From NCBI GenBank assembly GCA_048013815.1, contig CM106586.1, positions 7,130,001 to 7,194,000 of the forward strand: 64,000 nucleotides of DNA, written 5' to 3'. This stretch comes from Setoptus koraiensis (lineage: Eukaryota; Animalia; Arthropoda). Numbering within the stretch: position 1 is the stretch's first letter; the number at the start of each line of letters is the position of its first letter. This document shows positions 15,306-39,529 of the stretch, piece after piece. The notes under the pieces were generated by a model. It ran no database searches. It had not been told where the DNA came from and saw nothing but the letters and a program-made list of their open reading frames with translations. A program made the translations under genes and the position numbers.

Positions 15306-17462
15306 CTAATTGTTTATCTTGATTTCAACGAATTCATTCGGAGTGTTGCTACAATCGGACAAGTTGGAGGCCCCGATTAGGACAATTTGTTGAGATTTCT
15401 TCTTGGAGCACGGCATGGGATCCGACGCGTGGTGAATGTATCCGAGATTCTCATAAAAATGGTTACCATCTTCATCCTTGCTGGCATTATCGATGTCAAT
15501 ATGTTCTTTAGTTCTATTGCTTGTACTGTCAACGTAAAATTGTCTGTATCTCATCTGTAGTTGCTTGTGAGGATTGGCCGGCATGAAAAAAGTCGACACA
15601 AAGTCTATGAATGCACAAAATCCAATCAAATAAATCATGCCTTCCCATCCGATGAAAGTTGTGAGGTATTGCGATAACAATGCACTAGAAACAGTCGCTA
15701 TCACCGTGGACATGTAAACAAATCCAATATTTATACTGGCGTACTTATCACCAAATGAATCCTGAGCTGCAGATGGCATTAGAGCGTATTGACTTCCCAC
15801 GGCCTATTTATTTGGTTTATCAATTTTCGCATCCAGTTGAATAGATCGATCGAATGACAGTTGGTAAATATGAATAGGTGATTAATCAGGCTGCTTCAAA
15901 AGATCACACCACAGAGAATGATTAAAGCTTACCCCAACTGCCAGCACCACCCAAATGCCATAGACAATCTTGTTGAAATATTTTGTCATTGGCATGGACA
16001 TCACAAAGAACATTGTCATGCCGCTTAGCGGTATGCTCACTGCCTAGTAAAATAAATCATTGAATAAATATAATATACAAATCGCTATTATTATTCTATT
16101 AATCTAGTGCTTGTTGACACTCTACTGGTGACCACTTACTCTATAACCTAACTTGTCCTTCACGTGACCCATTGCAAGTCGACCTACGGTGTTGCTTATG
16201 GCGCAAGCGGCCCCAACAGCCGACAGGAAATAATCGTCTGGTATGAATGTCTGACCGAAGGGCTAGATTATGCAAATGCAACAATATAATGATTATTTTG
16301 GAACTAGAAAGTTTAGTCAATCGCAAACGATTGGATTATATGATTGAAGGAGATCTCACCTTGTATACAAATAATAAATAGATAAATATCAACTCAGATA
16401 TGAGCACCTTGAGAGACAGAAGCCAAAATTCAAGTGTTTTGAATGCGAACTTCGGTTCGATACTGTAATCTTGAAATTGAGTTTCTTTGTATTCTGCCGG
16501 TTCACAATTCTTAGCAGGAACAGCATCCACGTCTTTAGAAAAGTTGTCATGCGAGCTAGTTGTTGGTTTGTCTTTCTCACAGTCTTCTGACGAAGAGTTC
16601 CTCCTGGAGTCCGCTGGAAACATCAGGGCAACACCAATGCAGAATAGAGACAGTGTAATTGTCCCTTGGACTAGCGTTGATTGCTTGGTTCGGTCAAGAA
16701 CGTAATCGTCGTCGAAAAGTCTGAGTATTTTAGATGATATAATTGCATCTATTTAGCTTCTAAACTCTATCAGATTCGTCGGCCACTATGGTCGATAATG
16801 GATATAGATTATGGTGGAAGATTATGAATCGAGAAAGTTGACTCACCCCAGCTGGTTGGGTTCCACATTGTACGGATTAATTATTGCCGTTATTAATGGT
16901 GTAAAAATGGTTGGAGCCGCAGCCATCGACGCGGCCCCAATACCCGTCACTAGGCCTTTGTGTTTTGGATGCCATTCGCAAACATTCACCATGGGCGAAG
17001 TATAGCAACAGGCCAAACTGACTAGAAACGATCCACCGTAGACAATTACCACCAACAGAAACGTTGTATCTAATGCAAAATATGTTGCGAATATGCCGAG
17101 ACTGACAATGTGAAGAATTCAGAGCTGTCATTAAACGCTTAGCTATATGTTACAACTTCGGATTATTTGTCGAGGGTGCTGACTTACCTTTGCAACAGTC
17201 CACCAACTAGGCAAACTACTCGGACACCGACTTTACCTTTCATCCAACCACCTATGGGTAGGAGCAAAGCTGAAAATCCCGCTGCACTTAGAAACCAAAT
17301 TGAATCGTCTAAACTCATATCACTCTTTGATCTGTAAATTAGATAGGATGTGAGATAGACACCTGTGTTTCCTGCAGCAAAATACAGCCCCATGGCAAAG
17401 TAAACACATGATGTCCCTATAACGGTGAGATATGATTTCACTCTATCACTGATGATTAGCAT
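15306..17462 (-). CDS. MFS transporter, oxalate:formate antiporter (OFA)-like, ~540 aa
   Basis: Six exons joined in frame: 17462-17188, 17101-16847, 16720-16360, 16262-16140, 16043-15933, 15803-15306 (1623 nt). About 12 hydrophobic segments. Family-like motifs YTSPMVNVCEWHPKHKGLVTG, YKPFGQTFIPDDYFL, NTVGRLAMGHVKDKLGYR and QDSFGDKYASINIGFVY. An additional upstream exon cannot be excluded. Confidence 0.85.
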
Positions 17463-19170
17463 GATGATGTCCCCGTGTGAAGACCTCAGTGTGTCCAAGA
17501 TGTTTTTGGGATGATTGGTGTGATAAAATTCAATTGATCAATTGATAGTGATACTTCACCTAACTTCTGATCAAAACACTGGATTCGACACGGGATAAGG
17601 TGCAAAGGTCTACGTGATTATTGATTTGTGCTAAACTATTAGACTATTTTATGGGTTTATTGACTGATAATTGTTAGTTACATTCCTATATGACTTCTAA
17701 GTTGGTCAGTATGATGCGTTGTTGGTTTCGACAATAAAAATATCACAAGTGTCTCACAAATTTATGTCTTCGCATTACCATACTTTAGTTACAACTAATG
17801 ATCTTGTTTTTTTCATGTCTACAATTAATTTGATTTGTTGATGCAAATGTTTCTTCAGCGCACAACTGCGAATGATGCCCCTAAACCGTAATGATCCATC
17901 AATAATTTTCCATGTCAAATTGTTTTATTGTTTTAGCTGCACTCCACGTTTTGCTTGGTAAGTATGTTCACTTTCAATAAGGAGAACCTGTTGTTTTTCT
18001 TCGTCTGACAATAAATAATGCATATTCTATTGCTAGCTGTTGTGGATAAGAATCTTCGTTCACGATCAGGATCAAATCAAGACGCTTGTCAAACGGCTGC
18101 ATTAACTCTGGAAACTACAAACAAAACTGATTTTAACTAATTTGTTTCGCTGATACTTTGTTTGTTTGTTTCGATCTCAGAAACAATTTCCGACTAGAAT
18201 ACTAAGTGAGCCAAGTCGAATGATTCGTTGCATTAACTAGAGAGTGATGCTGAGTGATTCAATTCTTATCTTGAACAATATGTTATAACTAGGCAATATC
18301 CCAGTCTTGGTAGCGTTGAATGATACTCACACAGGTCCATTTGGTTTCGATGATGCTGTTGCCTGACACATGGCAGTTTTCAAATCTTTCATCTCAATAA
18401 ATGATGATTCCCTACCAATTAGAGAAAATTATGTCAATTAGGTTAACATTAAACGGAACTAAGTTGAACTAATTAGATCGTTGGAAGTGAGATGATTTTG
18501 TTTGTGCAAATTTGTGATCATCAGATAGTAGATAACAAGATAACACAAGAGACTTAGACCAACAGACAAAACTGGTTAAACATTCCGATTTTAATTCAAT
18601 TAAAGCCAAGCCGAGTCAAGCAATTACTAGTTGTTACTGAACATGCTTTCATGGTGTTACTACTCACACTTGTTATCTATCTGTATGTCAAACAATCTTT
18701 GCTATAATTTTCTTATTACACTTACCTGTGTCAATCAAATATCTTTAATAGGATCAATAATCTGGATGAGAGAATTTTTCACCTGTCGAAGCTAATCAAT
18801 GAGATCTTTCTATATTAAGACAAATTAATGGTGTGCGTTAAAAATTGAACTCTAATGTGACATACATCACAAGAATGAATAACTTTCGTTTGTTTGCTTG
18901 TTTTTGCTATACATCAAGCAACACCGGAAGTGTGGAATAAATATTATTATTGGAGCTTTAGGAGCCATACTGTCTGCGAGCAACACAACTATTTACCACC
19001 TCGTTCGCTTAGTTCGAGATTGCAAAAGAGATTATTCCAATGATTGGCCTGTTGATAGTCTATTTGCTGATTGCCATCCGTCATACATGTCAATGCTGTA
19101 TTTAAAACAACCAACTGTACCTATTGATAATGAGACAATATTAACAATGACTTGTGTGATATCCAAGCCC

Positions 19171-19274
19171 ACAGTTGGTTAAAGGGGACCAAATAAATCT
19201 GACAACGTAGCGATCCAGAGAAAGTGATTCATCTGAGCCCTACGTCAAAATTTAGTCCGATTCTAACCAACTGC
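19171..19274 (-). ncRNA. mir-133: microRNA mir-133 precursor (long hairpin, variant mature sequence)
   Basis: - strand 19192-19171 reads UUGGUCCCCUUUAACCAACUGU, 20/22 identical to canonical miR-133 (UUGGUCCCCUUCAACCAGCUGU) with an intact seed. The upstream 5' arm GCAGUUGGUUAGAAUCGGACUAAAU (19274-19250) pairs with it over ~22 positions. Confidence 0.85.
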
Positions 19275-22200
19275 GTATTAGACATCTCTCTTGCACGGTG
19301 CAATATTGACAGTCAATTATCTGTCTCGGATGGCATCGAGTTGAATGGGCTACAATGAAAGGGGTTTCTAACGGTGACCATGTATCACTGCAAAAAACTT
19401 GTTGCTTACTTGTTGTTTGCTAAAACGTTCTCTATGGGCGACTAATTTGATTTATATGCTATAAATGCAGTATATAGACAATATATTGTGGACTACTTAT
19501 ATGTTTATATTCTATCTACAGATTATTCACTTGGGGCAATACGTTTCCACTGCTCTATATTGACTGAATAAATGGACGACAAGATGACTGGATGATGCAA
19601 TGACTGAATGAAGTTGAGACAAGAAAAAAGTAAATAGAAATATTCTCTCTCAACAATGACTATCAACTGTAGGCAGTCAATAGATGATATATTATTAATA
19701 CATCTGAATAGTAGAGTTGCTCCCTCTTTCTCTCTATTTCTCTGAGTAAAGAGAGGGGGGTATACATAATTACAGAGCTTATTATGATAATAATAATAAC
19801 AATAATAGTGATAGAGGCGAGCTAAAGAGTTTTCTATTAGTTTTTATTAAGATAAAACAATCGGTTTTATCAGTTTGATTTTTCTCTCATTGGATAAAAC
19901 AGTGCAAACATACACACAAAAACACATCCACGAAAACAAACAGGGTTAGTAGCGGTAGTAATCACGATGGAAAATGTTCCGACTCTACAACTTCATCCTA
20001 GTGAGCTGATTTCCATCACAGTTGTATAGGTGTAGTAGAGCTACTACACTAATAAACTCAAGAGCCTCCGAGATGAAAGAGGAGTCATCAAAGGGGAAAG
20101 AATTAAAGATCACAAACATGGAATAAGAAAAAGATGATCTTGATTTTATAATTCGCATCTTGCTTAACTATCTATAACGTAGCTAGAACAGCTTGAACTA
20201 AGACTCTCATCTCAAGGATACTGCACACTTTACATATGCACATACTCTTTCCCTTGTTAGTGTGCTTATTCTTGAGGTACCTAGGTGTACAAAAACATAC
20301 AACCTCCTCTATGCCATAGTTTCCCCATGATTACTGTACTCTCTGCCTATCTATTATAATCATTTATTATTGTAACGCCGCCAAATTCTTCTGAATATCG
20401 CGCCTCTCTACACACATGTACACAGTTTAGTCCCCTTAATGTCTTGGCGCAATAGCGGAATGACATTAGCCCAATGACACAAGCTTTATATGTATTTTTG
20501 TTTAACTGTCAGCCCAAATCCTCTTCTCAGCTATATCTTTGGATTGCTCCTCCTCTGACAATTCTTGAATCACGATAATTCATTAATTCATGAAAACCTA
20601 GAATTTTCGCGCGTCTACAAAAGTTTCGCCATGCAGCAGTTAACAGGTTTACTAGGTATCTCGATACCTTCAATTAAGTATGATGAGCTTGTTGTTTAGG
20701 TTTTTAACCATTCTAATTGTATTGTACATATTCATACAAAACAATGAAAGAGTTGACATTTGGCTAAGGGTGATGAGTTGGGTGAACAACAAACAAAAAC
20801 ACAACAATTCTCTACGCCATATGAGAGATAACGACCAATATATGATGAAATGCTTTTTGTATGATGCAATACGAAGGAACAGTTCCTACAGTTTGTATTG
20901 GTAGGAAAAGTTAACTACTTTCAATATTAAAACAATATACAGCAGCATCAGACAATAATAATGAGAGCTCGGGGCATAAATGCATAAAGATGTCTGATCA
21001 GATGGTGAAATTCTTGCAGTTTGAATTTAAGAAGACGCCGTTCGTAAACTACCATACTACTTGACATTGTGTGTATGTGTGTGGCTTGGCGCTCTCTATT
21101 TGGAGATTTGCAAAATAATTATATAATAGCTTTCTCCATCGCTTCAAAACACCATTTTATGCATATGCACATTCGCATATGCTTACAAGAAGTCTGTTGT
21201 GTTGTGTTTTGCGTAGCATGGATACATGCTACAGATACATATTTCGAAGTGAGACTGGGAATATGCAGTGAATTGGCATAAGGCAAACAGACATGTTTGC
21301 GTATGTCAAGCTCTTCAAGACGATTCATACTTGGCTCATGTCAAGATAAAGCCCAAAGAGAACGAGAGAGATAATTAGTCCATGTCCTCTATAGTGCCAA
21401 GATGTTGATTGTGATGACGATGAAAAAGCCCATGTGGCGCCTAGCTCTTCCGCCTTAAAACTAAATGTAAATATATGTATGCATAATAGTAGGCGTAGCT
21501 AGACCGTATCTACTGTGTCTCTCAGAATTGGCTTAAATTTTATGATGCAGAAGAATAATGGTGATGGAAGCCAAGAATGTCTGTCATGTGGTGTTCGACT
21601 GGATGTGCACATAACGAATTTAATGTTGTTTGCTTGCTGTTGTATAGCGATAAGAGAAAGAGAGTTGTTTTGCATAGAGATAGTTCCATTTTAGGTGTAT
21701 TAAACTTTAGCGCAACTCCATTTGCTGGAGGGAGCCCTCACCTCCAGCGAACAAGCTTGCGGGCTTGCGGGCGAGCGAGCACAGCTGAACAAAAAGTTCC
21801 CAACAATTACAAATTTGGTTGTTGTTTGCAACCATCCTACTGGGCGCTGGTTGTGTTGATTTAGCTGGTTAGTAGATATAGAAAAACAAAAGATACCAAG
21901 TATTAGCGGCAGGGGCGGCGGCGACATGCGATTCTCGCTACATGTAGCTATCGGGCACACTTATGTAACTCTCGCAACACTCCTCGCGCTCTTGGATCTA
22001 GTCAACTCTTCCTGCTATAAAACCTGTCTCCCCCAGTATATTTGTCTTGTCCTCGTTTGATAGGCCTCAATTAAGGCATGCAGCTTTGTTTAATCTCTTG
22101 ACTGGGTGCACCATGTGAACCAGTTAGCGGTATGACAATGTCTATCACTCAGCTTGTCAGCTGTGCCATGTTGGCGTGGCCGGCGTCGTCAGTGTCGCCG

Positions 22201-23101
22201 ATGGTGTTGGCAGTGGCTAGGGCACATATGAGACAAGTGCTGCAGTTGTATGTTGTGAGTCAAATCTCATCGGAAGATGAATGGTCACCACACTTTGTGT
22301 GGAATAGACAAGAGAATGCATCAATAGACAGTATATTGTCCCCTAGTCGCTTTGTGTCGCTGCTCCCGAAGCACTACACTCACTGTGTGTAGGCGTTTGT
22401 GGCGTGTTGGTGCGATACCAGTTTGTATCTTTGAACTGTCTACCAGCATTGCCTATTGGCGGCCAGTCGAGAGATAAAGTAAGTTGGTCATGGATGGCAG
22501 TGGTGGCGATCTGTCTTGCAATCGTCCGTCGTCCCTTGATTCGTGTGTGCGATATGCAGCAACAGGCCCAGCCTCAGCGCATGCCGTCGCTCCGAAAATT
22601 GTTGTATATATCACTGGATATTATTGGACTGGATTGACATGATAAAATAGATTTATAAATGGTTCAAGCTAGCAGCGATTTTACGACTTGCATGCACAAG
22701 TTGATCATTTGAATATATACACATGATACGTGGTTGTTGTGTTACTTTCGCCATTGCCGCAGCGGGTAATTGGCCCGAGCGTCAGCCCCAGCCCGAAGCC
22801 CCAATTGCCGGTAACCAAAGACCCGCGCCCGAGCATTTGCCCGTTTTTACAATCGATTTGATTCGCTGCCTGTGGGCCTGAACGCTGTTACATGTGCACA
22901 CGCACTAGTCACTATAGCGCTGCTATTAGCAGTCTATCTGTTGGCACCGTGGCAAGCAGACGATAGAACATGTTGCGCGCAGATGGAGAGTGTAAGCGCG
23001 CGCTGCTGCTGCACTGACTGCGACGCTAGTGCAGTTACTGCTAGCAGCCAGTGACACTAGTTCGTTTGTGCCCATTCGGTCGCGTTGTGCGTCGGAGGTG
23101 C

Positions 23102-23399
23102 GCGCGGATATCCAACTGGATATCCGAACCGCCACCGACCCGCTCGGCACGCCCCAGTCCGAAGCGTATCCAGATCGCCAGAATGAATGGTTATCGGGTA
23201 TCCAAGAGTCTTTTTTTCCTGTGAGCCTCGAGCGTATACACCGAGTAGCGATCGCTCCGCAACACCAACACCGAGGCTGTTTTATCGCGAACCGCGCTCC
23301 CAATCCGCTCCGGATGTGGGCCGGATCGGACATGGAGCGCATTGGGCAGGGAGCGGGTCGGGCAGGGAGCGGATATCGGACGGGTATGGATATCCACGC
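23102..23399. mobile_element. ~300-bp foldback / MITE-like element with imperfect terminal inverted repeats
   Basis: Left GCGCGGATATCCA (23102-23114) vs right TGGATATCCACGC (23387-23399) is a 12/13 inverted match. Further inverted blocks GATATCCG and CCGACCCGCTC/GAGCGGGTCGG. TGC flanks both ends. No coding capacity evident. Confidence 0.45.
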
Positions 23400-25715
23400 T
23401 GCTGCGCATCGGCATGCGGCACAAATGCTGGCATAGGTGGCCGTTGTTGTGCGAGCGCGTGAGTAGTGGGCCTTTGAGCACACTCGCTGCATTTGTTAGC
23501 TCATTTGCACTGGCTGCGCGGCTTGTTAGTTCGACTGACTCAATCGGCGATCACGCGATCGAGTCGATTGATCCGGTCGATTGAGTCGATCGAATTACTT
23601 TTGTTCTCCGTTTGCCGGGCCGGGCCGAGCTCGCACTCGTCGCAGGGCGTCATCACTGTTCGAGTGTGTTTGTTTATGAACCCGCGCCACCGTCGTGTGT
23701 CAGCGTCATTCTAAGTGTGGCGTCAATAAATTCGACAACTGATACGGCAACAAGTAGTGCCGCTATTGCGCGCAACTCGTGCAAATGACGACTCCATGTG
23801 CACTCACCATTTTTATCCGATCACATTTGTCCGATTTCATCCAATTTTATAAAATTTTATCCAATTTCATCAGTGACCGAGCGACTGCCGCATTTATTCA
23901 AGATTCACCAATTTGGACACAACAAACCGGCCCCAACGTTGTCATGGTTGACGCGAATCGTGTTGCGACACACACACACACACACATTCGTCACAGCGAG
24001 CGCTGTTATGTGGCATAATGGACAGTGCAAGCGGAACAATAGAAACATAGAAATTATTCTTAATTTGGACAACAACAATCTAAACGCTAGCGCCTTGTGA
24101 GACGAATCTTCACTCACTCGAGTGTGATCGCAACTATCATGGCCAATCTAGCTAACCAAACGACGGCTTTGTGTGTCGAGTGTGTCAAGTGAGCAAGCGT
24201 GAGGACAAACTTTAATCGTGTGCATTGTTCCTCCGGCAAACAAATGATTCTCGCATCAAGAAACAACGTTCCTCTAAACAGGCATTCTTTATGCAAACAA
24301 GATCAGGGTAATTATCATCTCATTTTTGGCAACTGTAATATCAATACAAATGATAATTCCTGCTCACTCTCTCTCACTCTCTCTCTCTCTCCCTCTCCAT
24401 CTCTGACTCCCTCTTGCAGCCAGATATCGCAGATCGCACAATGGTGTGTGCCAGACGGGACAGATAGGCAGATAAAACAAAACGACGACGAAATGATTAT
24501 AAAACGCAGCAATATATAAATTAGGCAACATGCAACAGATGACGAACACACAGCCTGACATCCCTTGTGGGTGCCACATAACAGGGCCAGCGCTGTAGTC
24601 GTCTATTCCTTCCACCATGATCACTGGATCGGTAAACTCCAACGTAAGCCGAGTAGGGATATATAATCTTGAGGAATGGGAATGAGCAAAGCATGGGGAA
24701 GCGGCTCGGGGGGGGGGAGGCGCGAGACATCGGGTAAGCAACAACAAGAGAGCGATATAAATAGCAGCGACAGGCAAATATAGGATGATGTAGCAAGTGA
24801 AGTGATGCGGTACTCTCACAAAAGAACAACATCAACATCTCGTCTCATCGCTTACTCTCTTAAGTTCGAAAGTCATAGAGTCCTTCCTTTTGAGCCATCT
24901 CTGAGCTAAATTAGCACCACTAATATCAATATTTAACGCTAGTACCATCGCCACACCATACTAGACAAATGTTGAACACCACATACAAAACTAACAACTA
25001 TTATTGTAGTGAGCTATCGCCGTATGTGATATGATCCCACTCACTTTCTTCGTCCCATCATCCCACAACTTTCATTCTGTCGTCTCACAATCATCATCTT
25101 CGCCGTGATCATCTTTGTTTTTGGCTGCCCTCTCTCTCTTTCTCTTACTTACACACTCATCACAACCATATCATCAAGCGTACATGGTATTTACAGTCAT
25201 GTTGCTGGAGATAATCTGCAAAGACAACGAGGCTACTGTTGTACGCATCAAGCATCAACTACGAATCGTCGAATGATCGTCAGTTCAGTTTCATACTCTA
25301 CATTGGCATCAACGCGTAACGTTACATCACATACTACATGAATGAGGAGACTTATCTAACACCCAGAAACAGTCGCACATATTTTATCCATCACAGTCTT
25401 AGTTAGTCTATAGAAACGCCCTAAAACTCAACTTCTTCGACATAGTAAGATAGCAGCGGGCACCCATAGCGGCGTTGCTTAGTTTTCGACCGAGTGAGAC
25501 CAAACAACAAAAGTGTCATTATAACTTTAGTCGCCGATACGAGCAGACATATATTCATCTAATCATTAGTTCTGACTCAGGAAATTGATCATTTTAATAT
25601 TGGATCAACAATAACATTCGTCGAAAAAAAAAGTGATTTAATTGGACGACATCTAAACAATCAACAGTAATCACCATTCATTCTGCACATTACATGAGAT
25701 AATTTCCACATTTGA

Positions 25716-25785
25716 TTCCATGAATCTTTGCAATTCCATATGCTTTTAAGTGATGATATTATGGAATGTAAAGAAGTATGGAGTG
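25716..25785 (+). ncRNA. mir-1: microRNA mir-1 precursor, copy 1
   Basis: Mature TGGAATGTAAAGAAGTATGGAG at 25762-25783 is identical to protostome miR-1-3p. The 5' arm CCATGAATCTTTGCAATTCCATA pairs with it. Confidence 0.95.
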
Positions 25786-25828
25786 AGAGAGGAAAAACGA
25801 CTACGCGCTTCTATCATATCCATATCTG

Positions 25829-25895
25829 ATTCCATAATTCTTTGCACTTCCATATGGGACAAATTCTATCTATGGAATGTAAAGAAGTATGGAGT
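25829..25895 (+). ncRNA. mir-1: microRNA mir-1 precursor, copy 2
   Basis: Mature TGGAATGTAAAGAAGTATGGAG at 25873-25894; 5' arm CCATAATTCTTTGCACTTCCATA. Confidence 0.95.
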
Positions 25896-25967
25896 AAGGT
25901 AGGATTTACCGTCGACTGATCAATCTGCATCAACAATTATAATTATCATAATAAATATCTTAATTCA

Positions 25968-26030
25968 GGCCATATTTCTATGCAGTTCCATATACAATTG
26001 ATATTTATGGAATGTAAAGAAGTATGGAGT
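25968..26030 (+). ncRNA. mir-1: microRNA mir-1 precursor, copy 3
   Basis: Mature TGGAATGTAAAGAAGTATGGAG at 26008-26029; 5' arm CCATATTTCTATGCAGTTCCATA. Confidence 0.95.
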
Positions 26031-26301
26031 GAATAAGGATTGCAACTCCGAGTTATTAAGTAAGCAAATATCCATAAAATTATTATAGGTAATACGTGCC
26101 AGAAAAGTTCCAGTTACCGTGCTACTTTGTAGAAATCGTGTCTTCTATTATCAAAAAATATTTATTTCCTGTTTGGATTAAATAATTTCAAATAAAATTT
26201 TACTCTGGGTGATAACAAGTTCAAAATCATCAAGTTTGTTATTGCTACATAATATATTTAATCGCGACTTATGGCGAAAAGGCTAATTCATCATATAAAA
26301 T

Positions 26302-26949
26302 TTAAGCTGCATCATCGGGGTAAATGACCCTCCGCTGTTTCTTATTTTTGCCCATATTTGACAATCCTATTCTCAGAGGTGGCCTTCGTTTACGGTTTGT
26401 TTCACCGATAGTGGGTCCAATGTACCCTCTGATCGGCATCGAGACTTCCTCCAGATTGTTCCTAATGAACTGCTTCTTCCTCAATTCTTTGTACAATTCA
26501 AGGTCTTCATCTTGAAGATCGGTTTGGGTTTGAGCATCTTTAACTTCAACCACAGCTTGAATTTCGCGATCTTTGGATTGAGCCTTGCCGATAAAACATG
26601 TGCTAGATACCTCGAAATTCACTTTCTTGGGAGCCGTTTCCGTCTTTTGGTTTCTTGGTTGAGGACATAGAAAGATATGTGCTTTAAGAGCATTGTCCAC
26701 CTGTGGTTTCTCCTGCACTGGTCCATTTTTTACTAGTTCTTCCTTGACTGATTCATCCTTTTCTAGTTCAACCTCGACTAATTCATCCTTTACTAATTCC
26801 TCTTTTGCTGAATTGTTCTTCACTGGTTTGATATTCTCACTATTTTTGCAGTTTCTATTTTGTCTCCTCCGAGGTGGATCTGAACGAAAATTTTGCATAA
26901 TATCTTCAGGAATCTGTGAGAATTCAAATACGTCTTCCTGTGTAGACAT
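26302..26949 (-). CDS. Uncharacterised charged protein, 215 aa, with KDAQTQT motif
   Basis: ATG-initiated 215-codon ORF in AT-rich DNA. K/E-rich, with (K)(E/D)ELV pentapeptide repeats, KDAQTQT and a basic RKRRPP stretch. Confidence 0.65.
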   Translation of the reverse strand: MSTQEDVFEFSQIPEDIMQNFRSDPPRRRQNRNCKNSENIKPVKNNSAKEELVKDELVEVELEKDESVKEELVKNGPVQEKPQVDNALKAHIFLCPQPRNQKTETAPKKVNFEVSSTCFIGKAQSKDREIQAVVEVKDAQTQTDLQDEDLELYKELRKKQFIRNNLEEVSMPIRGYIGPTIGETNRKRRPPLRIGLSNMGKNKKQRRVIYPDDAA

Positions 26950-27478: not shown

Positions 27479-29500
27479 ATGGATCATCAGACGATCAAAA
27501 ACAACATTGATAATTGTATTGCCAGTTCGGTGTCAACCATCAATCAGTCAAGATCATCATTGAAAACACGCGATTCGGCCCTTCACACTCTGAGATCATG
27601 CCTGGCGAAATTGAAATTGAACACATTTATTATCAAGGAACTAAGCCCGAGTAAGAGAATGTCCATCATAGAATGTTTATGTGATGTCTATGCAAATAAA
27701 CAACGGACCCAGTTGGATTTTGATTGTCTTCTAATGTGCCTCAAGGTGCTCCCAAATGACTGTAGCGTCATGAGAGGAAAAATATTTCAACATCTGCAAG
27801 TGCATGCCAATCACGCCAATAGAAATCAAGCATTTAATCCACTGGTCACCGTCATCGCCGACTGCATGGCTCGCTTATATACTCTGGTGAAAAAAGGTGT
27901 CTCACACAATGGCAAAAGTCTCGACACTTGCTCACAAGAAGCATGGAAAGAAGGTATGGCGGCACAATTGACAACTATAGAGCGAAATGTTGATTTAATA
28001 AGTAGCATCTGCAACATTGCATCATCAAAAGTGATAAGACGAGACGAATCCAATAATGCAAGCGGTGATTTTCATAATCCAAAAGTTAGCATCAGTAACG
28101 ATAATCAATCCTATGATATTAAAATCATGGGCTACATTCGAAACATTGATTTTGCTTCTCACGTAATCTGCTCGCTGATATTAATTGGTGTTAGATTCGA
28201 AAAGCCCATTCCAATTACTGTCATTTTGAGAGTATTCGAAAGACTTTCGAATATACGGTGGAGAAGTTATCCCAAGAAACCTCATGGTCAAGATAAGCAA
28301 CTTATCTATAGCCATTCTGTAAGCTTTGTCAGGTTACATTTGATGATTTTGCACGCTCTCTTCAGAGCTTGCGACAGCAATCTTATAAGATACACAGTTT
28401 CTATCAATTCCAGCGTCCTTGGTATGCTCGAATGGACCAGGATCAGCCTTTCGAAGACACTAGAAAAGGCATCTTTAATCGATCTCCGTTGCGCGATCTA
28501 TCAATTTGTTGAAGCGATGCTTGGAACGCTCTTTCTGAATGTCAACTTGGAACAAACTCAACTTGAAAAACTCATATTCACAGAAATTCTCCAAGACTCA
28601 CGACCGAATTTCATTGATGAATACCCCATACAGGACCTCAACGACAAATCTTCAAGATGCTCTGCATATGAATCATATGCAAATACCGCGTTGGCTAAAT
28701 TGACCACTAAGAGTCTCAGCTGCCTCAACAAATTGGTTGTTGTTTATAAAGGCTTCTTAGATCCAGGTTTAGACATCAAAATCAAGCGCTTCGCGATTGT
28801 AACTTGCTTGGATATTTACAGGGAGTTCGATGACATTCAATATCCTTACGATATCTCACACTGCCGCCTCGAACTCATCAAACTTTTGACATCTCTTGCC
28901 AATGAACCATGCAGTACTTCCACATCAGAGATTGTTGACTTCATTCTTGAGCAAGCAATAAGATTTGATCCAGATAGTGAGATAGGCTTCACGTGTCAGG
29001 CGTCTCTGAAGAACAGTCTTACACGTCCAGTTCTTGTCTCTCACCATGACGCGTACACCATCTTTGGGCGACATATGGACCTGGAACAGCAGCTAGACCA
29101 GCTTGAGCAGATTGGAGAAACAAAAGGAAACGACGAAAGAGGTGCGCATGAAAGAGAAGAAGATAAGGATGGAGAGCAAGAAGTACTGATGGAAGGAGAA
29201 GAACAAGAAAAAGTAGAGAGGGAAGCCGAGGAGAAGGAAAAACAGGAAGCAAAGGGAGAAAGAGAAAAAGTGGCAGAGAGAGAACCAGAGGATAAGGGAG
29301 AAGAGGAAGCAAAGAAGAAGGTAGAGGAGAAAGCAAAGGAGATTGAAAACACAAAAGAAGACGTAATACATCTAGATGATAGTGATGCGGAAGTTGAACA
29401 AATGATGCAAGATTTTGTTGATACCGAAAACAAATCTATGGAAAACTTTTTTGATAGTGAGCAAATTATGCAAGACTTTGTTGTTGATACTGTGGACTGA
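27479..29500 (+). CDS. PELP1: PELP1/Rix1-like protein (60S biogenesis), 673 aa, single exon
   Basis: Helical N-terminal domain. PIPITVILRVFERLS and YPYDISHCRLELIKLLTSL...DSEIGFTCQASL resemble PELP1 core motifs as recalled. Glu-rich tail ends in VIHLDDSD and MMQDFVD. Confidence 0.72.
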   Translation: MDHQTIKNNIDNCIASSVSTINQSRSSLKTRDSALHTLRSCLAKLKLNTFIIKELSPSKRMSIIECLCDVYANKQRTQLDFDCLLMCLKVLPNDCSVMRGKIFQHLQVHANHANRNQAFNPLVTVIADCMARLYTLVKKGVSHNGKSLDTCSQEAWKEGMAAQLTTIERNVDLISSICNIASSKVIRRDESNNASGDFHNPKVSISNDNQSYDIKIMGYIRNIDFASHVICSLILIGVRFEKPIPITVILRVFERLSNIRWRSYPKKPHGQDKQLIYSHSVSFVRLHLMILHALFRACDSNLIRYTVSINSSVLGMLEWTRISLSKTLEKASLIDLRCAIYQFVEAMLGTLFLNVNLEQTQLEKLIFTEILQDSRPNFIDEYPIQDLNDKSSRCSAYESYANTALAKLTTKSLSCLNKLVVVYKGFLDPGLDIKIKRFAIVTCLDIYREFDDIQYPYDISHCRLELIKLLTSLANEPCSTSTSEIVDFILEQAIRFDPDSEIGFTCQASLKNSLTRPVLVSHHDAYTIFGRHMDLEQQLDQLEQIGETKGNDERGAHEREEDKDGEQEVLMEGEEQEKVEREAEEKEKQEAKGEREKVAEREPEDKGEEEAKKKVEEKAKEIENTKEDVIHLDDSDAEVEQMMQDFVDTENKSMENFFDSEQIMQDFVVDTVD

Positions 29501-29534: not shown

Positions 29535-30672
29535 TTATTCACTTTTGAGACGTTTTTCGACTGGCATCGATCCTTCTAATCTTGGTCCATATGTGTGAAG
29601 ACTGAGTGTACCTAACCATTGTAGCATAGATTTTTCTTTTAATTCAGCTTCGACTACTACAGGGTATATATGTTCGTTCTTAAAGTTATCAATCTTATCT
29701 GAGACTGACTCCCACTTTATAGGATCGTGGTGACCATCTCCACCAAATCTCTTATTATACCTGTCGAAATGTGTTTCTTCTAACATAAGGCCTACACCTG
29801 GTGCTTTTGGTATATCCATCCTGTCAGATTCGAAGGACTTTTTGATATGCTCTTCGCTAGCAAAGCCCTTCATTACCGCGATCGCTAAACCGATCATTTT
29901 TCTAATCTGATGCATCATGAATGACTGACCTTTGACACGAATAATCACGAATTCTAAATCGTCTTGATTACATGGATAGAATGGATCGCTACACTCCATC
30001 ATGTGAATTCGTCGAACAACACTTGGATCGTTCGGCTTCTTTCCGGATGTAAAGTTGTGGAAGCAGTGATTTCCGACATATCCACCGAGAATATTATTGA
30101 ATTGTTTAATAATTAGCTCACCAGCCTTAAATTTCTCTGTGGTTAGTTCTTCTGGAGGAGCTAGTGCAAATGACGGCATCAGATATGAGTAGGTTCTAGC
30201 ATCACAATAGTTTTTGGAACAAAATGCTTGTGTCACACGTCTGACACCCATAACTCTTATGTCTTTGGGTAATTTTTCATTCAAATCCTCGATTTTTTCT
30301 GGTAGAGTTTCTCTAACTTTCATAGAGCAAATTTGCCTTATCGCAGATACACTTTTGTCTGTTCTGGCGGCCCTCTGAAAATGGTATTCCTGAGGCTTAT
30401 GGAATTGTTCTTCTGAAATAATTTCACAGTCCCGAAGGGCTTCCATAAGTGGTTCTTCTACAGTCTTTGTGCCTGGATTTCTGTTGGGATAAGGAATCTA
30501 ATTCATTTATGTTAACATATTGGATATCTAATCTTATAAGTTTACTTTTATACGAAATTACAGCTAGAACAAAGAAATCTGGTACTCACCTCTGCATTCC
30601 AAAGTAATTTTTGCCGCAATAACTCAATAGCATACAAAACTTGCGAGTCTTTATTCTCTTCACACCACTCAT
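29535..30672 (-). CDS. PUS1: tRNA pseudouridine synthase 1 (TruA family)
   Basis: Exon 30672-30590 (MSGVKRIKTRKFCMLLSYCGKNYFGMQR), intron 30589-30481, exon 30480-29535. Motifs FQRAARTDKSVSA, CDARTYSYLMP, GNHCFHNFTSG, KGQSFMMHQIRKMIG and IPKAPGVGLMLE. Further N-terminal sequence is possible. Confidence 0.92.
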
Positions 30673-32371
30673 GGTTGTGGCCGGCGTCAATAACAAAAAA
30701 GTATAAAATAAGATTAAGGATCCGACCCCTAAAAATATTATTCTATGAAAATAATCAGACTTTATATTACATGCTGGTGGTAACATATGCATGTGAAACA
30801 AGAAATGTAAATACAAATTTTTGATTCAGACACGTGGGTGCAAAGCTGCACATATCCATCGTGCTCACGAAAGAATTCAGCACAGAAAAATTCCGGCACA
30901 GAAACTGCATGATTTTGTGCTGCCTTTTGCTTCACAATTTAATATTGTTGGCGCCTTTTTTAGAGTACCGAGCTCACGTAATGGTAATGCGGGGGAGGGG
31001 GACTCCGTTCCCTGTTTTCTCGTTTCTCGATCTCTTATCCTCACAAAATGAACGCATTCAGAACAATTCCATCTTAGTTGGCAAGACAACAGCAAGAGTA
31101 TTTAATGTCTTGATTATACTAGTGCTCATGGAGAGATAAAACACAAGATTTCGTTCAGCCTTCTTACACACAGCCTAAGATTGTCGTTGGCTTGAAAGTC
31201 TACTGATGGAAGATTTGATTCGATGGGAAGAGTCTTCGTAGGAGCATTCATTATGCAATGTTACTACTGTTTATATAGTAGCGAGAGAATGACTGTAGGT
31301 CCTAGTTTAGATGTTACAACATGGTACCTTGTGTGTTGCTCTCTCTCGAGAGTAGTCATGTAAGACTTTATGCTCTCACGAACTGATTACCACACAGATT
31401 CAGTCATCAGAAAATGTGGTATTGTAAAGTTAGAGATTATAAAATAAACACAACAATCGTGAATATCCGAGCTGAACATGTTACGGCAAGACTCGATCTG
31501 CATAAAGCATACTGCATAAAGTATAGTTTGAGAAGCATATCTATATGTTCGATCATGATTGTTACAGGCTTACATCATGGCAATTTAAAGTTGAAACAAT
31601 TATAGAAAGATATAATATAATACCGTATATTGAATCACATCTAAGCATTATCCTGTATGAAATCATCTAATCAGGAAATCGAGCCCGCGAAGGGCCATTG
31701 TGTAGCGATTGTACCCGGTTGGTATCTAGGTCTAGTGTGCAGTGTTTTTGTTGATTGGGTAGAAACGAAGGCACTTCAATATATACTGAGCAAGACTGTT
31801 GAGCGATGGGTACAGTGTGTAGTATAAAATATCACCTCCGATTAGTTCCTCAAGCGACACATTAGAATAATAGTGCGCGCAACAGTTGCGCACAACATGC
31901 TAAATCTAGGCTAGCAAAATAGATGGTAGAAATAGGCCGTAGAGGCGCAGAGGATCACGCTTGTTGTGTCAGCATCACAATGAACAAAATTCAAGGGCAA
32001 ATTTTCTTGAAGTCTCATGGAAATAAATTCGAATCAAGTCTATAAACACGCAAGATGAAAAAGTTCGATTCGCAGCACACACACGCTTATTTCATTGTGT
32101 TATTCAATGACTGATGGATGGAACTTGATAGCATTTCACGATATGGAACTGCAGGCACAAAGGAACGAAGGCGACTCACAGATAAGCAGAAGGGGGTCCC
32201 GTCCGTATTATGATACTATATTAACTATTGGGGAAATTCGCATGCAGGGATGAAATTATTAGCCAGCCTGGCAAGACAAAATTGAGCAAGGAAATCAATT
32301 ATAGGCAGGAAATTACATACATTTTCTTGCAGCAAAATAAAACATTTGTGTTAACATCGGCAATTTATATC

Positions 32372-35300
32372 ATGTCTCAGCAACAATTTAATAGACAGTA
32401 TAATCATGAGAAAAATTATCACAAAAAACCCGTGACAAATCACACATCGGCGTTCATGCAAAAAATTCAACATTCATCAGATAGAAACCGAAGCCATCTC
32501 GCCGGTGATTTATCTGCGCCAGCATCATCATCTTTCACTTATCACGGGGACCAACAGCAAGCTGTCGCTTCTGATCGAGATACCATCGACGAAGACTATC
32601 CATTCTCATTCAATGCACCTGCGACATCTGTAATAGCACCAAAAAATTGTTATACGTCTGCTAGATATCTTGCCAATTCCTCTCCAAGAGCCATGTATCG
32701 AGATTGCGATACGTCGGATCTATCGCCGTCCAGCAGATTTAGTCAATCGAGACAGAGCAAAATTCAAGCAAACCAACAACAAGTAGTCCATCCCGGCCAA
32801 CCTGACCAGAATATTATAAGCAACAATCAATATCAGATCAAGATCGAAAGTCCTTGCTCATACTCAAACTCTTCGCCTACTTCGCGTGACATCTCGATAC
32901 AAAGAGGTAATAGTAATGATAGCATTCAAACGGACCAGCAATCCTCTATGAGTAGCAATATCAATAAAGCATATTATTTGAGATCGCTGAGTCAAGAGGG
33001 TAAGTATGGCATAGTTCCCACCACAAGTAATGCATCAGATCAATATAGCTTCTTTCAAGGGAACGATGCAGGAATGCAACATCAGGCGCAAAAAACAACA
33101 ATCAATGACAGACAAGATTTTGTTGCTTTTGAAGATAGAATTGGAGCTAGCACTAGTCAATCGCCCAATCAGGACATTCTGAGGGGCATAAGACTAGGCA
33201 GATCACTGGATGACAATCCTGATGATAATGTCAATCATGAAAATGGACTGAGTCAACATTCGTCTTCATTTCTAGATCCCTCGTCACCTCTGCAGTCATC
33301 TCAAACGTCGTCAAAGCAATCCTCTCATTCAATCAACAGTTATAATAAGGGCTCTATACCACCATCTAGGAGTGATACGTCAGACTTAAGTTACTACGAC
33401 GAAGGTCAATCATCGCTTGCTGAGAGTCACTCTTTGTCATCGTCGTCAACTGTCACAACTATTGTCAATAATCCAACAAAAACAAGTAATATGCGCTTGT
33501 GGAAAAAGTCGGCTTCGGCTTCTTCAGCTTCATTGCAATCTTCTTCTAGTCATTCTCTGGCAACTATATGTTCATCTTTGAATAATACCTCGCACGGAGA
33601 AGAAATTCAGACACCCTCATTCAATGCAACAGATCATAATCTCGACGATCCAAGTTATGAACAACGAGATACGGTGCCCTCAAACAATTATCCTTACCCC
33701 AGGGAGCAAGTTGCTCGTCGGAAGATCATGGATGAACAATATCGTTTGATATCTTCCTCATTGTCACCTACTCCTTCGACCAGCTCTATACTGACCGAGG
33801 GAATAGTTCTCTCCGATACATGCAATCAATATCCCATCAATGCTTATAGAACCAGATCTGCATCTTCAATAAGCAGTAGATCAAGCCCATCTGAATCCAA
33901 TCCGCAATCTCTGCCTATGCCGGTTGGACAGAATTTACCTCCCAACGAAAACTATCACAATCTTGGAAATAGATCAACTGACTTGAAGAATAAGGCATCT
34001 TCGTCTAGACTTCGCCGAGAACCCGCAATTGTATGCCCTGATACAGACATCACTCTGCAAACAAGATATGGGCCAACAATTAAGTATGGATTGGAAAAAA
34101 GTGAAACTGTTGGGGCAAATATGATGAACTTTGATAGGATTCACACAAAAAATGAAACCATAGATGTTGATAACTCGAGCATGAAGGATCGACCATTCGC
34201 TAATAGGTCGGGCAACTACCCTTCGATGACTTATTCGCAATCACAAGATGATAAGTTAGGATCTGATTTTCCTAGCCAAGTATCGAAGGATAATCATGGG
34301 CAAAGAGTTGATGGGCGAATACTTACAAGAAAACCTGACAATTCAATTGCGGCTAATGCTGATAAATTTCAATTCTCAAAACAAGAGACACTTCCATACA
34401 ACAACCCCTACATATCACCAACTTACAGCAAGTATTACATAATGAATGAAAACGATGGAACCATCAGTCAACCCGTCACTAAAACAAAAATCAATTCTTA
34501 CATTGATTGCAATAAAGAATCCCGGGACGCGACTGTTAAAAATCTATGTGATTCGTCGAAGCAATATGTGCCTCAGATTTGTTTACAAACTATCTCAGAT
34601 TGCTCTTCTGATGGATCACACCTGGAAGAATGGAACAGAAGATCTCCGAAGATCTATGTAAGAAAAGATGATGATTTGATGCTTCCAACAAACGACTCAT
34701 CGATCTCGCGCCCAGATGCTCAATCTTGTTCCTCTTCAAAACAACGTAATGTCTCCATGTTAGTTCCAAGTGTATCTGTTAACAATGATCCAGCAATTGA
34801 AGAAAATCGAATAACCGCTTCGGTGATCAAATGTGTACAGGCTGATCAAATCAAAACTGAACCCATCATTTCAGATGAAAATATCCAGTTTGATAAGATG
34901 TCGAAGATAAACAATTCAAGGAGAAGATCCCCGATTGACGAGAAAGACAACTGTAACAAACTCAAGGCTGAGTTGCGACATTTGCGAGAGGTGAATTTAG
35001 AGCTACAGAGGAAAGTGAAATATCTTGAAGATCTAAAACTAATCAATGACAGTCGTCAATACGCGACAGCACTATCTACCGCTACAAACAACATGTCAAG
35101 GCGAATATCTAGGGCTGGAACAAAATTTTTCGATCAATCTATGCCAACTTATGATGATTATCGTAAATACTCGTGCAAATCAACACACAATGAAAAATTT
35201 CCATCCAAAGATTGCCTTAAACAACACAAGAATGCTGAAAAACATCTTATTGGCTCAGATGGAAGTTTCGAAAGCAATTCGAAAGGACTCCCCGAAAAGC

Positions 35301-38300: not shown

Positions 38301-39425
38301 TTAAAATGGCAAACCTCAAAGAGAGCTGCGTTACGAAGAAGTCGCTATGGTCAGCGAAGATCGTGGTCATCATCTGAAAGACTGTTTCATAGAGTCATAG
38401 AGTTGGATGAGACCGCTGAAGTCCGCAGTTCGAATTGCGAGCTAGCTGCAGCCCCGAGTATGAGGGGCTCTAGTTACGAGTTTGTAGAATTTCCAAGTTC
38501 CGATCTGAGCGATTGGCTTAAATTTGATGAAGAGTCGGGATCTATCAGTGATACTGTTCAATTACTTAAGTTGGAATTACTCAAACTCGGGACCTTAGAT
38601 AAGGATAGCTCCGTCGCTGTTGCTGAATCGAATTCTGTGCAAAGTGGAATTAATTCCATTATATGTGATCAAGTTGAAGAGAGGGAAGAAAGGGAAGAAA
38701 GTGAATTACGTCTCCAGGAAATAACTAGTCTAGCAAGTGAAAGCTCTGAGACCAGTGGCATCATTGGGCTGAATGACTCTCTGGCGGAGAAAGAAGTTTA
38801 CGTAATAAGATTGCCTCGAAAAAGAATGGATCACATGCAACCTCAAACAATTGTACCTGAGAGCTCAACCCACACCCACAATCAAATCAATGATAAAGGT
38901 CAAATTAGTACAATAAGTAATATCATATCGAGCTCATCTCTAGATAGCCAATCGATGGTGGAAGAGGATATTAATCAATCGTGGGATATGAGGTCCTCGA
39001 CCACTTGTGACCCACCAACATCCACGACAAACACTTCGACGAATACTGCAAGTGTGGTGGCTACTAGTAGCGACAGCAACAATAGCTTGGACAGCAATAG
39101 CCTGCCAAACAGCATGCAAACTAAGAACTTTGAGCCAAATGCCTTGATTATGAACCACCCAACTAGTGAGTTGTTGGATGAAAACCAGGACCACTACTCG
39201 GGTAATAGACAACTATCATCTCATGCATCAACTTCCAGAGCATCCAACAATGATGCGATCAAAGATTCAAAGCTTTGCACGGAGTTCTACAAGTCGAGAC
39301 AAATATTCGTTAAGCTCACAGAGTGTGCAGAAGGCGAAAGGTCGCCTGATTCTCCATCGTTTTCTAGATCGGACCGTAGATGGTCAATCAAGAATAAATC
39401 CGATTGTAAAAAGAGTGCCCCGTAG
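32372..39425 (+). CDS. Large Ser/Asn-rich disordered protein with coiled-coil regions, ~2277 aa, 3 exons
   Basis: First ATG 32372. Exons 32372-37595, 37716-37870 and 37971-39425 join three track ORFs in frame (GTGAGT and GTAGGT donors). Coiled-coil heptads lie near aa 870-900 and across the two splice junctions. Family not recognised. Confidence 0.8.
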
Positions 39426-39529
39426 TGCTATTTACCTCACTGTTCCTATACCCATAACAATTAAACTAAGATCAAATTAATTGCATTTGGTGTGGACTCA
39501 GCCCTAATCACAATTGTTTATTTTTTTGT

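What the first reader, a model, noticed from the sequence alone, without database searches (positions are those of the whole stretch)
19171..26030. Rearranged myomiR locus: mir-133 and mir-1 face away from each other across ~6.4 kb
Seen: mir-133 on -, three mir-1 on +, with no convincing protein gene between them. Known: mir-1 and mir-133 are anciently linked muscle microRNAs, generally in the same orientation (bicistronic in vertebrates). Inference: an inversion retained linkage but excludes a single pri-miRNA, implying divergent transcription from a shared muscle enhancer or bidirectional promoter, with a 3:1 hairpin dosage. This is the best candidate for an undescribed system in the window.
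Basis: partly seen in the sequence, partly recalled or inferred. Interest (0 to 1): 0.82.

Follow-up and report, generated by a model that had tools for sequence, protein, structure and literature searches.

The report
Head-to-head muscle microRNA genes in mites
In this mite, the two ancient muscle microRNA genes (mir-133, and mir-1 in three copies) point away from each other across a gene-free 6.4 kb spacer; two other mite species share the layout, so it is an inherited variant of a well-known gene pair rather than a new kind of system.

Summary
Three tandem mir-1 hairpins lie on the + strand at 25709-26036, each with the exact 22-nt mature miR-1. One long mir-133 hairpin lies on the - strand at 19166-19279, with an intact seed and two substitutions. 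They are head-to-head across 6,429 nt, and no ORF in that spacer looks coding.

The window comes from an eriophyoid-like mite: its pseudouridine synthase is 66% identical to that of Aceria tosichella.

The layout is neither an assembly error nor private to this genome. Two independently assembled metagenome contigs, L002 and L013 (the latter confirmed by L024), show the same layout. L013 is shown to be an acariform mite; L002 is inferred to be its relative. Both have head-to-head orientation, tandem mir-1 copies, the same G18A change in miR-133 and the same unusual mir-1 5' arm. A third contig, L003, keeps the usual same-strand order.

Flanking genes differ between the window and these contigs, yet the pair stays together. 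The only conserved spacer sequence is a 16-mer, CCTAAAATGGAACTAT, which contains a consensus CArG (SRF-type) box.

Best reading: two divergent primary transcripts from separate core promoters that share an upstream region. This is a new variant of the known miR-1/133 cluster. The same window carries two first-stage notes on its parts (the mir-1 triplication and the long mir-133).

The parts
19166..19279 (-). mir-133 hairpin, a long precursor of about 104-114 nt. The mature 3' arm at 19171-19192 reads UUGGUCCCCUUUAACCAACUGU: seed intact, C12U and G18A relative to the canonical sequence.
   Evidence: Rfam RF00446 scores 32.7 bits, E = 3.5e-4, full model 1-74 with a 51-nt loop insertion. Two mismatches to canonical miR-133. 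Fold -51.2 kcal/mol, z = -6.8. The 5' arm pairs with both substituted positions.
21680..21695 (-). Conserved 16-mer CCTAAAATGGAACTAT. Its first ten bases are a consensus CArG box, CC(A/T)6GG, the SRF-type site. This is a candidate shared muscle regulatory element.
   Evidence: Exact 16-nt match to the L013 spacer, and 13/16 in L002 (ACTAAAATGGAGCTAG). Same orientation relative to the miRNAs, and 29-37% of the way along the spacer from the mir-133 side, in all three. None of 200 shuffles gives a match of 16 or more. It occurs once in the window. Binding is inferred, not tested.
21700..23700 (.). G+C-rich island inside the spacer (about 52% G+C against about 39% around it). It is non-coding and starts just right of the CArG element.
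   Evidence: Composition profile. ORFs here score as non-coding and have no Pfam hit.
22016..22022 (+). Candidate TATA box (TATAAAA) pointing toward mir-1, 335 nt from the CArG core. It is one of several candidates; others lie at 24513, 24660 and 24756.
   Evidence: Motif listing. Inference only: the window's spacer is A+T-rich enough for such motifs to occur by chance.
21119..21125 (-). Candidate TATA box pointing toward mir-133, 562 nt from the CArG core.
   Evidence: Motif listing. Inference only. The better-supported equivalents are in L002 and L013 (GGCCATAT(A/T)AATACA).
25709..25790 (+). mir-1 copy 1; mature arm at 25762-25783.
   Evidence: RF00103 44.4 bits, exact mature sequence, fold z = -5.5.
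25823..25901 (+). mir-1 copy 2; mature arm at 25873-25894.
   Evidence: RF00103 59.5 bits, above the gathering score, exact mature sequence, fold z = -7.0.
25961..26036 (+). mir-1 copy 3; mature arm at 26008-26029.
   Evidence: RF00103 41.2 bits, exact mature sequence, fold z = -7.3.
15306..17498 (-). Flanking gene, not part of the unit: an MFS-type transporter. Its N-terminal exon ORF runs to 17498, 1.7 kb downstream of mir-133 on the same strand.
   Evidence: ORFs, weak Pfam MFS_1 hit on the 15306-15800 exon, coding score 0.155. No counterpart lies next to mir-133 in L002 or L013.
26302..26949 (-). Flanking gene, not part of the unit: a 215-aa ORF convergent with the mir-1 cluster, ending 266 nt from mir-1 copy 3.
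   Evidence: ORF list, coding score 0.144, no Pfam hit. Not homologous to the SNARE-like gene in the same position in L002.

Best explanation
This is the mite version of the ancient miR-1/miR-133 muscle microRNA cluster, in an inherited head-to-head configuration. mir-133 is made from a leftward primary transcript. The three tandem mir-1 hairpins, all within 330 nt, are made from one rightward polycistronic transcript. Each transcript starts at its own core promoter inside the gene-free 6.4 kb spacer, so that spacer is upstream DNA for both. A conserved CArG-type (SRF-like) element in it most likely helps drive both in muscle. Keeping this shared upstream region intact would explain why the two genes have stayed adjacent while the genes around them were reshuffled. 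Shown: the hairpins, their strands, the absence of coding sequence between them, the same layout in two other mite species, and the conserved motif. Inferred: the transcription start sites, SRF binding, muscle expression and co-regulation.
For: Hairpins and strands are established. The spacer is non-coding. A metagenome scan with the miR-1 22-mer returned 34 loci, and three of them hold both families. L002 has mir-1 on - and mir-133 on +, with a 5.6 kb spacer. L013 has two mir-1 copies on - and mir-133 on +, with a 2.45 kb spacer. Both are head-to-head like the window. L024 is a second assembly of the L013 species at 99% identity. Both relatives share the derived G18A in miR-133. They also share the unusual near-perfect mir-1 5' arm with its flank, CTGATTCCATAA..TCTTT, which is absent from the other 30 loci. 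L013 is an acariform mite: its ARHGEF10-like protein is 59-64% identical to named acariform mites and about 41% to other chelicerates. The window is eriophyoid-like: its pseudouridine synthase is 66% identical to Aceria tosichella and 53% to Tetranychus. Flanking genes are not shared between the window and L002/L013. ARHGEF10 lies next to mir-133 in L013 but not in an 89%-identical relative or in Oppia. The conserved CArG-containing 16-mer is supported. In the G+C-rich L002 and L013 spacers there is exactly one TATA box pointing to mir-1 (TATATAAG, 482 and 342 nt upstream of the first hairpin). There is also one conserved GGCCATAT(A/T)AATACA pointing to mir-133, 331 and 258 nt from the CArG core.
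Against: There are no expression data, so transcription starts and muscle specificity are inferred. The exact consensus CArG is present in the window and L013 only; L002 has a one-base variant (ACTAAAATGG). No MEF2 consensus site occurs in any of the three spacers. CArG boxes upstream of mir-1 across all loci run at 0.17 per kb, compared only with my rough estimate of about 0.06 per kb. The window's own TATA candidates are ambiguous because the sequence is A+T-rich. The conserved CArG sits close to the inferred mir-133 promoter, so it may serve mir-133 alone. The family-level identity of L002 and L013 is unresolved, so the age of the inversion is uncertain.
Confidence: 0.62

Rival explanations
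1. Passive relic. The two genes are independently regulated by unrelated promoters, and they remain neighbours only because an old local inversion happened in a compact genome. The shared 16-mer would be either chance or a mir-133-only promoter element.
For: In L002 and L013 the inferred core promoters are 1.5-3.8 kb apart, and the CArG core lies only 258-331 nt from the mir-133-directed box. No other conserved block exists in the spacer between the window and these relatives.
Against: Linkage and orientation persist in three species while every other neighbouring gene compared differs between the window and L002/L013. A 16-nt exact match was never reached in 200 shuffles.
Confidence: 0.22
2. 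mir-133 is hosted by the neighbouring MFS transporter gene. It would lie in that gene's 5' leader or first intron on the - strand and be co-transcribed with it.
For: Same strand, and the hairpin is 1.7 kb upstream of the MFS N-terminal exon ORF, which runs to 17498.
Against: No MFS gene lies downstream of mir-133 in L002 or L013, so any such hosting would be new to this lineage. A conserved TATA-type box and CArG lie upstream of mir-133 in the relatives.
Confidence: 0.08
3. Assembly artefact: a misassembled inversion created the opposite orientation.
For: None found. The window is a single assembly, and I could not inspect any reads.
Against: The same orientation appears in three independent metagenome assemblies of two related species (L002, L013, L024). 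No long inverted repeats flank either gene block.
Confidence: 0.02
4. The mir-133 hairpin is a decaying relic: long loop, two substitutions in a normally invariant mature sequence, Rfam score below threshold. On this reading the locus is in effect a mir-1-only cluster.
For: RF00446 scores 32.7 bits against a gathering score of 55.5. There are two mismatches to the canonical mature sequence.
Against: The seed is intact. Both substitutions are matched by pairing partners in the 5' arm. The fold has z = -6.8. The hairpin aligns along its length with L002's (69.6% over 112 nt). Long mir-133 hairpins with conserved arms also occur in L002, L013 and L003.
Confidence: 0.06

Closest known systems
Vertebrate bicistronic miR-1/miR-133 clusters (miR-1-1/133a-2, miR-1-2/133a-1, miR-206/133b)
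   Same: Same two microRNA families, physically linked within a few kb. A CArG (SRF-type) site is a known regulator of these clusters in vertebrates; that is from my own knowledge of Zhao et al. 2005 and was not checked here. The 'mir-1 cluster' of mir-1 plus mir-133 is called ancient in PMC1388199, and ancestral in PMC12257675.
   Different: There, both hairpins lie on one strand and are cut from one primary transcript. Here they are on opposite strands facing outward, so co-transcription is impossible, and mir-1 is triplicated.
Compact bicistronic miR-1/miR-133 of Ciona (Kusakabe et al. 2013, as cited in PMC6589888)
   Same: [quoted passage not shown]
   Different: Same-strand and polycistronic in Ciona; divergent here.
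Same-strand invertebrate locus L003 (metagenome contig JAALOO010000697.1)
   Same: mir-1 and mir-133 are 1.85 kb apart, and mir-133 also has a very long hairpin of about 240 nt.
   Different: Both lie on one strand in the order mir-1 then mir-133, with canonical miR-133 and the ordinary mir-1 5' arm. It represents the usual state against which the mite layout is the derived one. Its taxon is unknown.
Drosophila mir-1 and mir-133
   Same: A precedent for the two families not sharing a transcript in an arthropod. From memory, fly mir-1 is driven by Twist, Mef2 and an SRF-like site.
   Different: From memory only, and not verified with the tools here: the fly genes are more than 100 kb apart on chromosome arm 2L. 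The mite genes are a compact head-to-head pair conserved across species.

Membership tests
mir-1 microRNA precursor family (Rfam RF00103) | Hairpin that matches the covariance model at or above the gathering score | tested here: met
   Copy 2 scores 59.5 bits against a gathering score of 45.6. Copies 1 and 3 score 44.4 and 41.2 bits, just below it, with full-length model alignment.
mir-1 microRNA precursor family (Rfam RF00103) | Canonical mature miR-1 on the 3' arm | tested here: met
   Exact 22-mer UGGAAUGUAAAGAAGUAUGGAG three times on the + strand, with 0 expected by chance.
mir-1 microRNA precursor family (Rfam RF00103) | Mature small RNA is actually produced | not testable with these tools
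   No small-RNA data are available.
mir-133 microRNA precursor family (Rfam RF00446) | Hairpin that matches the covariance model at or above the gathering score | tested here: not met
   32.7 bits against a gathering score of 55.5, E = 3.5e-4. The shortfall comes from a 51-nt loop insertion and two arm substitutions. L002's orthologue scores 51.5 bits.
mir-133 microRNA precursor family (Rfam RF00446) | Mature 3' arm with the miR-133 seed (UGGUCCC), paired in a stable hairpin | tested here: met
   20 of 22 bases identical, seed intact. Fold -51.2 kcal/mol, z = -6.8, with both substituted positions paired.
Polycistronic miR-1/miR-133 cluster (as in vertebrates and Ciona) | Both families within a few kb of each other | tested here: met
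   6,429 nt between the hairpins.
Polycistronic miR-1/miR-133 cluster (as in vertebrates and Ciona) | Same strand, so that one primary transcript can carry both | tested here: not met
   mir-133 is on -, mir-1 on +, facing outward. The same holds in L002 and L013.
Bidirectional promoter pair | Two divergent transcription starts within about 1 kb that share one promoter region | tested here: inconclusive
   No transcription start data. In L002 and L013 the only opposed TATA-type boxes are 3.8 and 1.5 kb apart, which argues against a classical bidirectional promoter. The window has candidate boxes 335 and 562 nt either side of the CArG, but they are not distinguishable from chance.
SRF/CArG-regulated muscle gene | Consensus CArG box CC(A/T)6GG in the regulatory region, conserved in relatives | tested here: met
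   CCTAAAATGG at 21686-21695, inside a 16-mer identical in L013; L002 has ACTAAAATGG.
SRF/CArG-regulated muscle gene | SRF binding and muscle-specific activity | not testable with these tools
   Needs EMSA, ChIP or reporter assays.

The most novel reading that the evidence does not exclude
The head-to-head myomiR unit is an old, selectively maintained trait of a mite clade that includes Eriophyoidea. It would be held together not by co-transcription but by a shared upstream region with an SRF-type element. That would make it a natural experiment showing that enhancer sharing alone can preserve miR-1/133 linkage. Together with miR-133 G18A and the altered mir-1 5' arm, it would also be a rare genomic change usable for the disputed placement of eriophyoid mites.
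Probability: 0.3. Interest if true: 0.6.

Novelty: new variant of a known kind. Interest (0 to 1): 0.4.

Why it matters
miR-1 and miR-133 form one of the oldest conserved microRNA linkages in animals, and the usual explanation is that they are cut from one transcript. Here the linkage survives in several mite species even though the genes face apart and the surrounding genes have been reshuffled. This suggests that something other than co-transcription, most simply shared regulatory DNA, can hold the pair together. The point is testable and of modest interest to people who study microRNA cluster evolution. The derived characters (inversion, G18A, mir-1 5' arm type) may also be useful markers for mite phylogeny. 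It does not amount to a new class of system.

Tried and rejected
- Exact look-up of two window proteins in public assemblies found nothing, so the window's genome is not in the collection under these gene models.
- The 673-aa neighbour gave no hit in the word-indexed search. The full HMMER search found only remote relatives at 34% identity or less. The contig of one of them, L047, holds neither miRNA.
- The pseudouridine synthase neighbour located a 90%-identical relative (L035, SRR33593474), but that contig ends about 2.7 kb short of the position corresponding to the mir-1 cluster. Other eriophyoid-like contigs (L036-L041) have different neighbours and no miRNAs.
- The ARHGEF10-like gene beside mir-133 in L013 was followed into relatives (L042, L044-L046) and Oppia nitens (L043). 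No miRNAs were found, so that linkage is not conserved.
- Scans of the viral and prokaryote-genome collections with the miR-1 22-mer found nothing.
- No MEF2 consensus site occurs in any spacer.
- No alignable non-coding block exists between the window's spacer and those of L002 or L013 apart from the CArG 16-mer.
- The ORF downstream of mir-1 in the window is not homologous to the SNARE-like gene at that position in L002/L013.
- Literature searches found statements that the cluster is ancient. They found no description of its orientation in mites or other chelicerates. Supplementary Table S18 of the Aculops lycopersici genome paper, which lists miRNA hits, is not held.
- The listing of cluster members returned no sample accessions, so I could not tie L002/L013 to eriophyoid-bearing samples.
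Full report
**Observation**

An Rfam scan of the window finds mir-1 at 25823-25901 (+) above the gathering score (59.5 bits). A permissive scan of 17-29 kb adds two more mir-1 hairpins at 25709-25790 and 25961-26036 (44.4 and 41.2 bits). It also finds a mir-133 hairpin at 19166-19279 on the - strand (32.7 bits, E = 3.5e-4).

- The canonical miR-1 22-mer occurs exactly three times, all on the + strand, with none expected by chance.
- A miR-133-like 22-mer lies at 19171-19192 (-). It has two substitutions outside the seed, C12U and G18A.
- All four hairpins fold much better than dinucleotide shuffles, with z from -5.5 to -7.3.
- In the mir-133 hairpin both substituted bases are paired, and the precursor carries about 50 extra nucleotides in an extended upper stem.
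- Each family scores better on the stated strand than on the opposite one.

The two sets are therefore head-to-head. mir-133 is read leftward and the mir-1 trio rightward, away from a 6,429-nt spacer at 19280-25708.

**Is the spacer gene-free?**

No spacer ORF hits Pfam. I trained a codon-usage log-odds score on the window's eight longest ORFs.

| ORF set | Score |
|---|---|
| Training genes | 0.12-0.18 |
| Independent real exons (MFS exon, pseudouridine synthase, 215-aa neighbour) | 0.13-0.16 |
| Three longest spacer ORFs | -0.06 to 0.03 |
| Any spacer ORF (maximum, a 60-codon ORF) | 0.12 |

The spacer contains a G+C-rich island at about 21.7-23.7 kb and no sizeable repeats.

**Whose genome is this?**

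The pseudouridine synthase at 29535-30446 (-) has its best named match in the eriophyoid mite Aceria tosichella, at 66% identity. Tetranychus, oribatid and astigmatid mites match at 50-54%. Many unnamed matches at 58-67% come from Logan sequencing-run assemblies, and one reaches 90%. The window therefore comes from an eriophyoid-type mite, in line with other notes of this scan that call the genome a mite.

**Is the arrangement private, or an artefact?**

A scan of JGI metagenome contigs with the miR-1 22-mer returned 34 loci. Three of them carry both families.

| Locus | mir-1 | mir-133 | Layout | Spacer |
|---|---|---|---|---|
| Window | three copies, + | - | head-to-head | 6.4 kb |
| L002 | two copies, - | + | head-to-head | 5.6 kb |
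| L013 | two clean tandem copies, - | + | head-to-head | 2.45 kb |
| L003 | - | - | same strand, mir-1 then mir-133 | 1.85 kb apart |

L024, from a different sample, is 99% identical to L013 over 2.5 kb. It is an independent assembly of the same species.

L002 and L013 share further derived characters with the window:

- the G18A change in miR-133;
- a distinctive, almost perfectly complementary mir-1 5' arm with the flank CTGATTCCATAA..TCTTT, unlike the CCGTGCTTCCTTAC-type arm in the other 30 loci;
- a long mir-133 precursor that aligns along its length between the window and L002 (69.6% over 112 nt).

L003 has canonical miR-133 and the ordinary 5' arm. It shows what the usual state looks like.

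L013's ARHGEF10-like gene is 59-64% identical to named acariform mites of both major orders and about 41% to ticks, spiders and horseshoe crabs. L013 is therefore an acariform mite of a lineage without a named genome in the database. A protein 89% identical to it occurs in the same sample as L002, which suggests that L002 is a relative.

I conclude that the head-to-head layout is inherited within a mite clade. A misassembly is excluded for practical purposes.

**Flanks are reshuffled but the pair stays together**

- Translated comparison of L002, L013 and L024 with the whole window matches nothing except the hairpins.
- The gene beside mir-1 is a SNARE-like tail-anchored protein in L002 and L013. 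In the window it is an unrelated 215-aa ORF.
- ARHGEF10 lies 6.6 kb from mir-133 in L013. No miRNA lies within 10 kb of it in an 89%-identical relative (L044) or in Oppia nitens (L043).
- Eriophyoid-like contigs carrying the pseudouridine synthase have other neighbours and no miRNAs.

Against this background of rapid rearrangement, a retained adjacency with fixed orientation suggests constraint.

**A conserved element in the spacer**

The three spacers do not align. They do share more short words than Markov shuffles predict: six 10-mers against 0.5 expected. That null does not model the G+C island or simple repeats.

One shared word stands out. The window and L013 share an exact 16-mer, CCTAAAATGGAACTAT, at window 21680-21695, reading on the - strand. 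L002 has ACTAAAATGGAGCTAG.

- No match of 16 or more arose in 200 shuffled pairs; the maximum was 15.
- The motif occurs once in the 64 kb window.
- Among 47 loci it occurs only in L002, L013 and L024.
- In all three species it has the same orientation relative to the miRNAs and lies 29-37% of the way along the spacer from the mir-133 side.
- Its first ten bases are a consensus CArG box, CC(A/T)6GG. That it binds SRF is inference from the consensus.

SRF is a known driver of miR-1/133 in vertebrates and of mir-1 in flies; this is from my own knowledge and was not checked here.

**Promoters**

TATA-type motifs are rare in the G+C-rich L002 and L013 spacers, so they are informative there. Each spacer has exactly one pointing to mir-1 (TATATAAG, 482 and 342 nt upstream of the first hairpin). 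Each also has a conserved GGCCATAT(A/T)AATACA pointing to mir-133, 331 and 258 nt from the CArG core.

This suggests two separate core promoters, 3.8 and 1.5 kb apart, with the CArG between them and nearer the mir-133 side. That is a shared upstream region rather than a classical bidirectional promoter.

In the A+T-richer window several TATA candidates exist on each strand, for example 22016 (+) and 21119 (-). They cannot be ranked. No MEF2 consensus site occurs in any spacer. CArG boxes upstream of mir-1 across all loci run at 0.17 per kb, against my rough estimate of about 0.06 per kb by chance.

**Mechanism**

My best reading, at about 0.6, is two divergent primary transcripts: mir-133 alone, and a three-hairpin mir-1 polycistron. 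Each starts from its own promoter within the spacer, and they are co-regulated through shared upstream DNA that includes the CArG element.

The rivals are:

- independent regulation with passive linkage (about 0.2);
- hosting of mir-133 by the downstream MFS gene (about 0.08), which is not conserved in the relatives;
- a decaying mir-133 (about 0.06), opposed by the paired substitutions and conserved arms;
- misassembly (about 0.02).

**Comparison with what is known**

The mir-1/mir-133 cluster is described as ancient or ancestral (PMC1388199; PMC12257675). In Ciona the two are processed from a single transcript (PMC6589888).

I found no paper in the searchable library that describes its orientation in mites or other chelicerates. 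The Aculops lycopersici genome paper reports miR-1 in that eriophyoid and notes the absence of Exportin-5 and Staufen (PMC7738191). Its miRNA coordinate table is not held.

The locus meets the sequence criteria of both microRNA families, with mir-133 below Rfam's threshold because of its long loop. It fails the same-strand criterion of the polycistronic cluster. I rate it a new variant of a known kind.

**Verdict**

It is instead a lineage-level orientation variant of a famous cluster. The useful part is that linkage persists without co-transcription, around one conserved SRF-type motif. Interest 0.4.

The same window also carries two first-stage notes on the parts (the mir-1 triplication and the long mir-133). 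My results agree with both.

Noticed in passing
window 19166-19279; L002:7482-7602; L013:3205-3416; L003:8375-8615; L002:1301-1898: Unusually long pre-miRNA hairpins. mir-133 spans about 104 nt in the window, 120 nt in L002, 220 nt in L013 and 240 nt in L003. The two L002 mir-1 copies have about 140 and 230 nt between their arms, yet still fold with the arms paired (z = -3.5 to -8.8). The Aculops lycopersici genome paper reports no Exportin-5 or Staufen in that eriophyoid (PMC7738191), which might relax limits on precursor length.
   Followed up: partly
window 23527-23597: A roughly 70-nt near-perfect palindromic hairpin (20-nt arms, 31-nt loop) lies inside the G+C-rich island of the spacer. 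Fold z = -3.0 on + and -2.4 on -. It is not conserved in L002 or L013. It could be a new hairpin RNA or a protein-binding palindrome.
   Followed up: partly
window 27479-29500 (+): A 673-aa intronless ORF next to the mir-1 cluster has coding-like codon usage and no Pfam domain. It has only 23 remote relatives at 34% identity or less among 1.8 billion representatives; of the ten whose sources I looked up, all come from run or metagenome assemblies. This looks like a fast-evolving family of unknown function, possibly restricted to mites.
   Followed up: partly
window 26036-26302: The mir-1 cluster and the convergent 215-aa gene are only 266 nt apart. Poly(A)-type signals occur on both strands inside that gap (AATAAA on + at about 26191; AATAAA on - at about 26168-26163). 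The two transcripts must end almost back to back or overlap.
   Followed up: no
L002:365-1165 (+) and L013:35-457 (+): A conserved 266-aa coiled-coil protein with a C-terminal membrane anchor (SNARE-like, weak DUF6594 hit) sits immediately downstream of mir-1 on the opposite strand in both related mites. It is absent from that position in the window.
   Followed up: partly
window 29535-40230 vs L035: A Logan contig from run SRR33593474 is collinear with window 29.5-40.2 kb, with about 90% protein identity in the pseudouridine synthase. This marks a close relative that could be used for phylogenetic footprinting if its reads were reassembled across the miRNA locus.
   Followed up: partly
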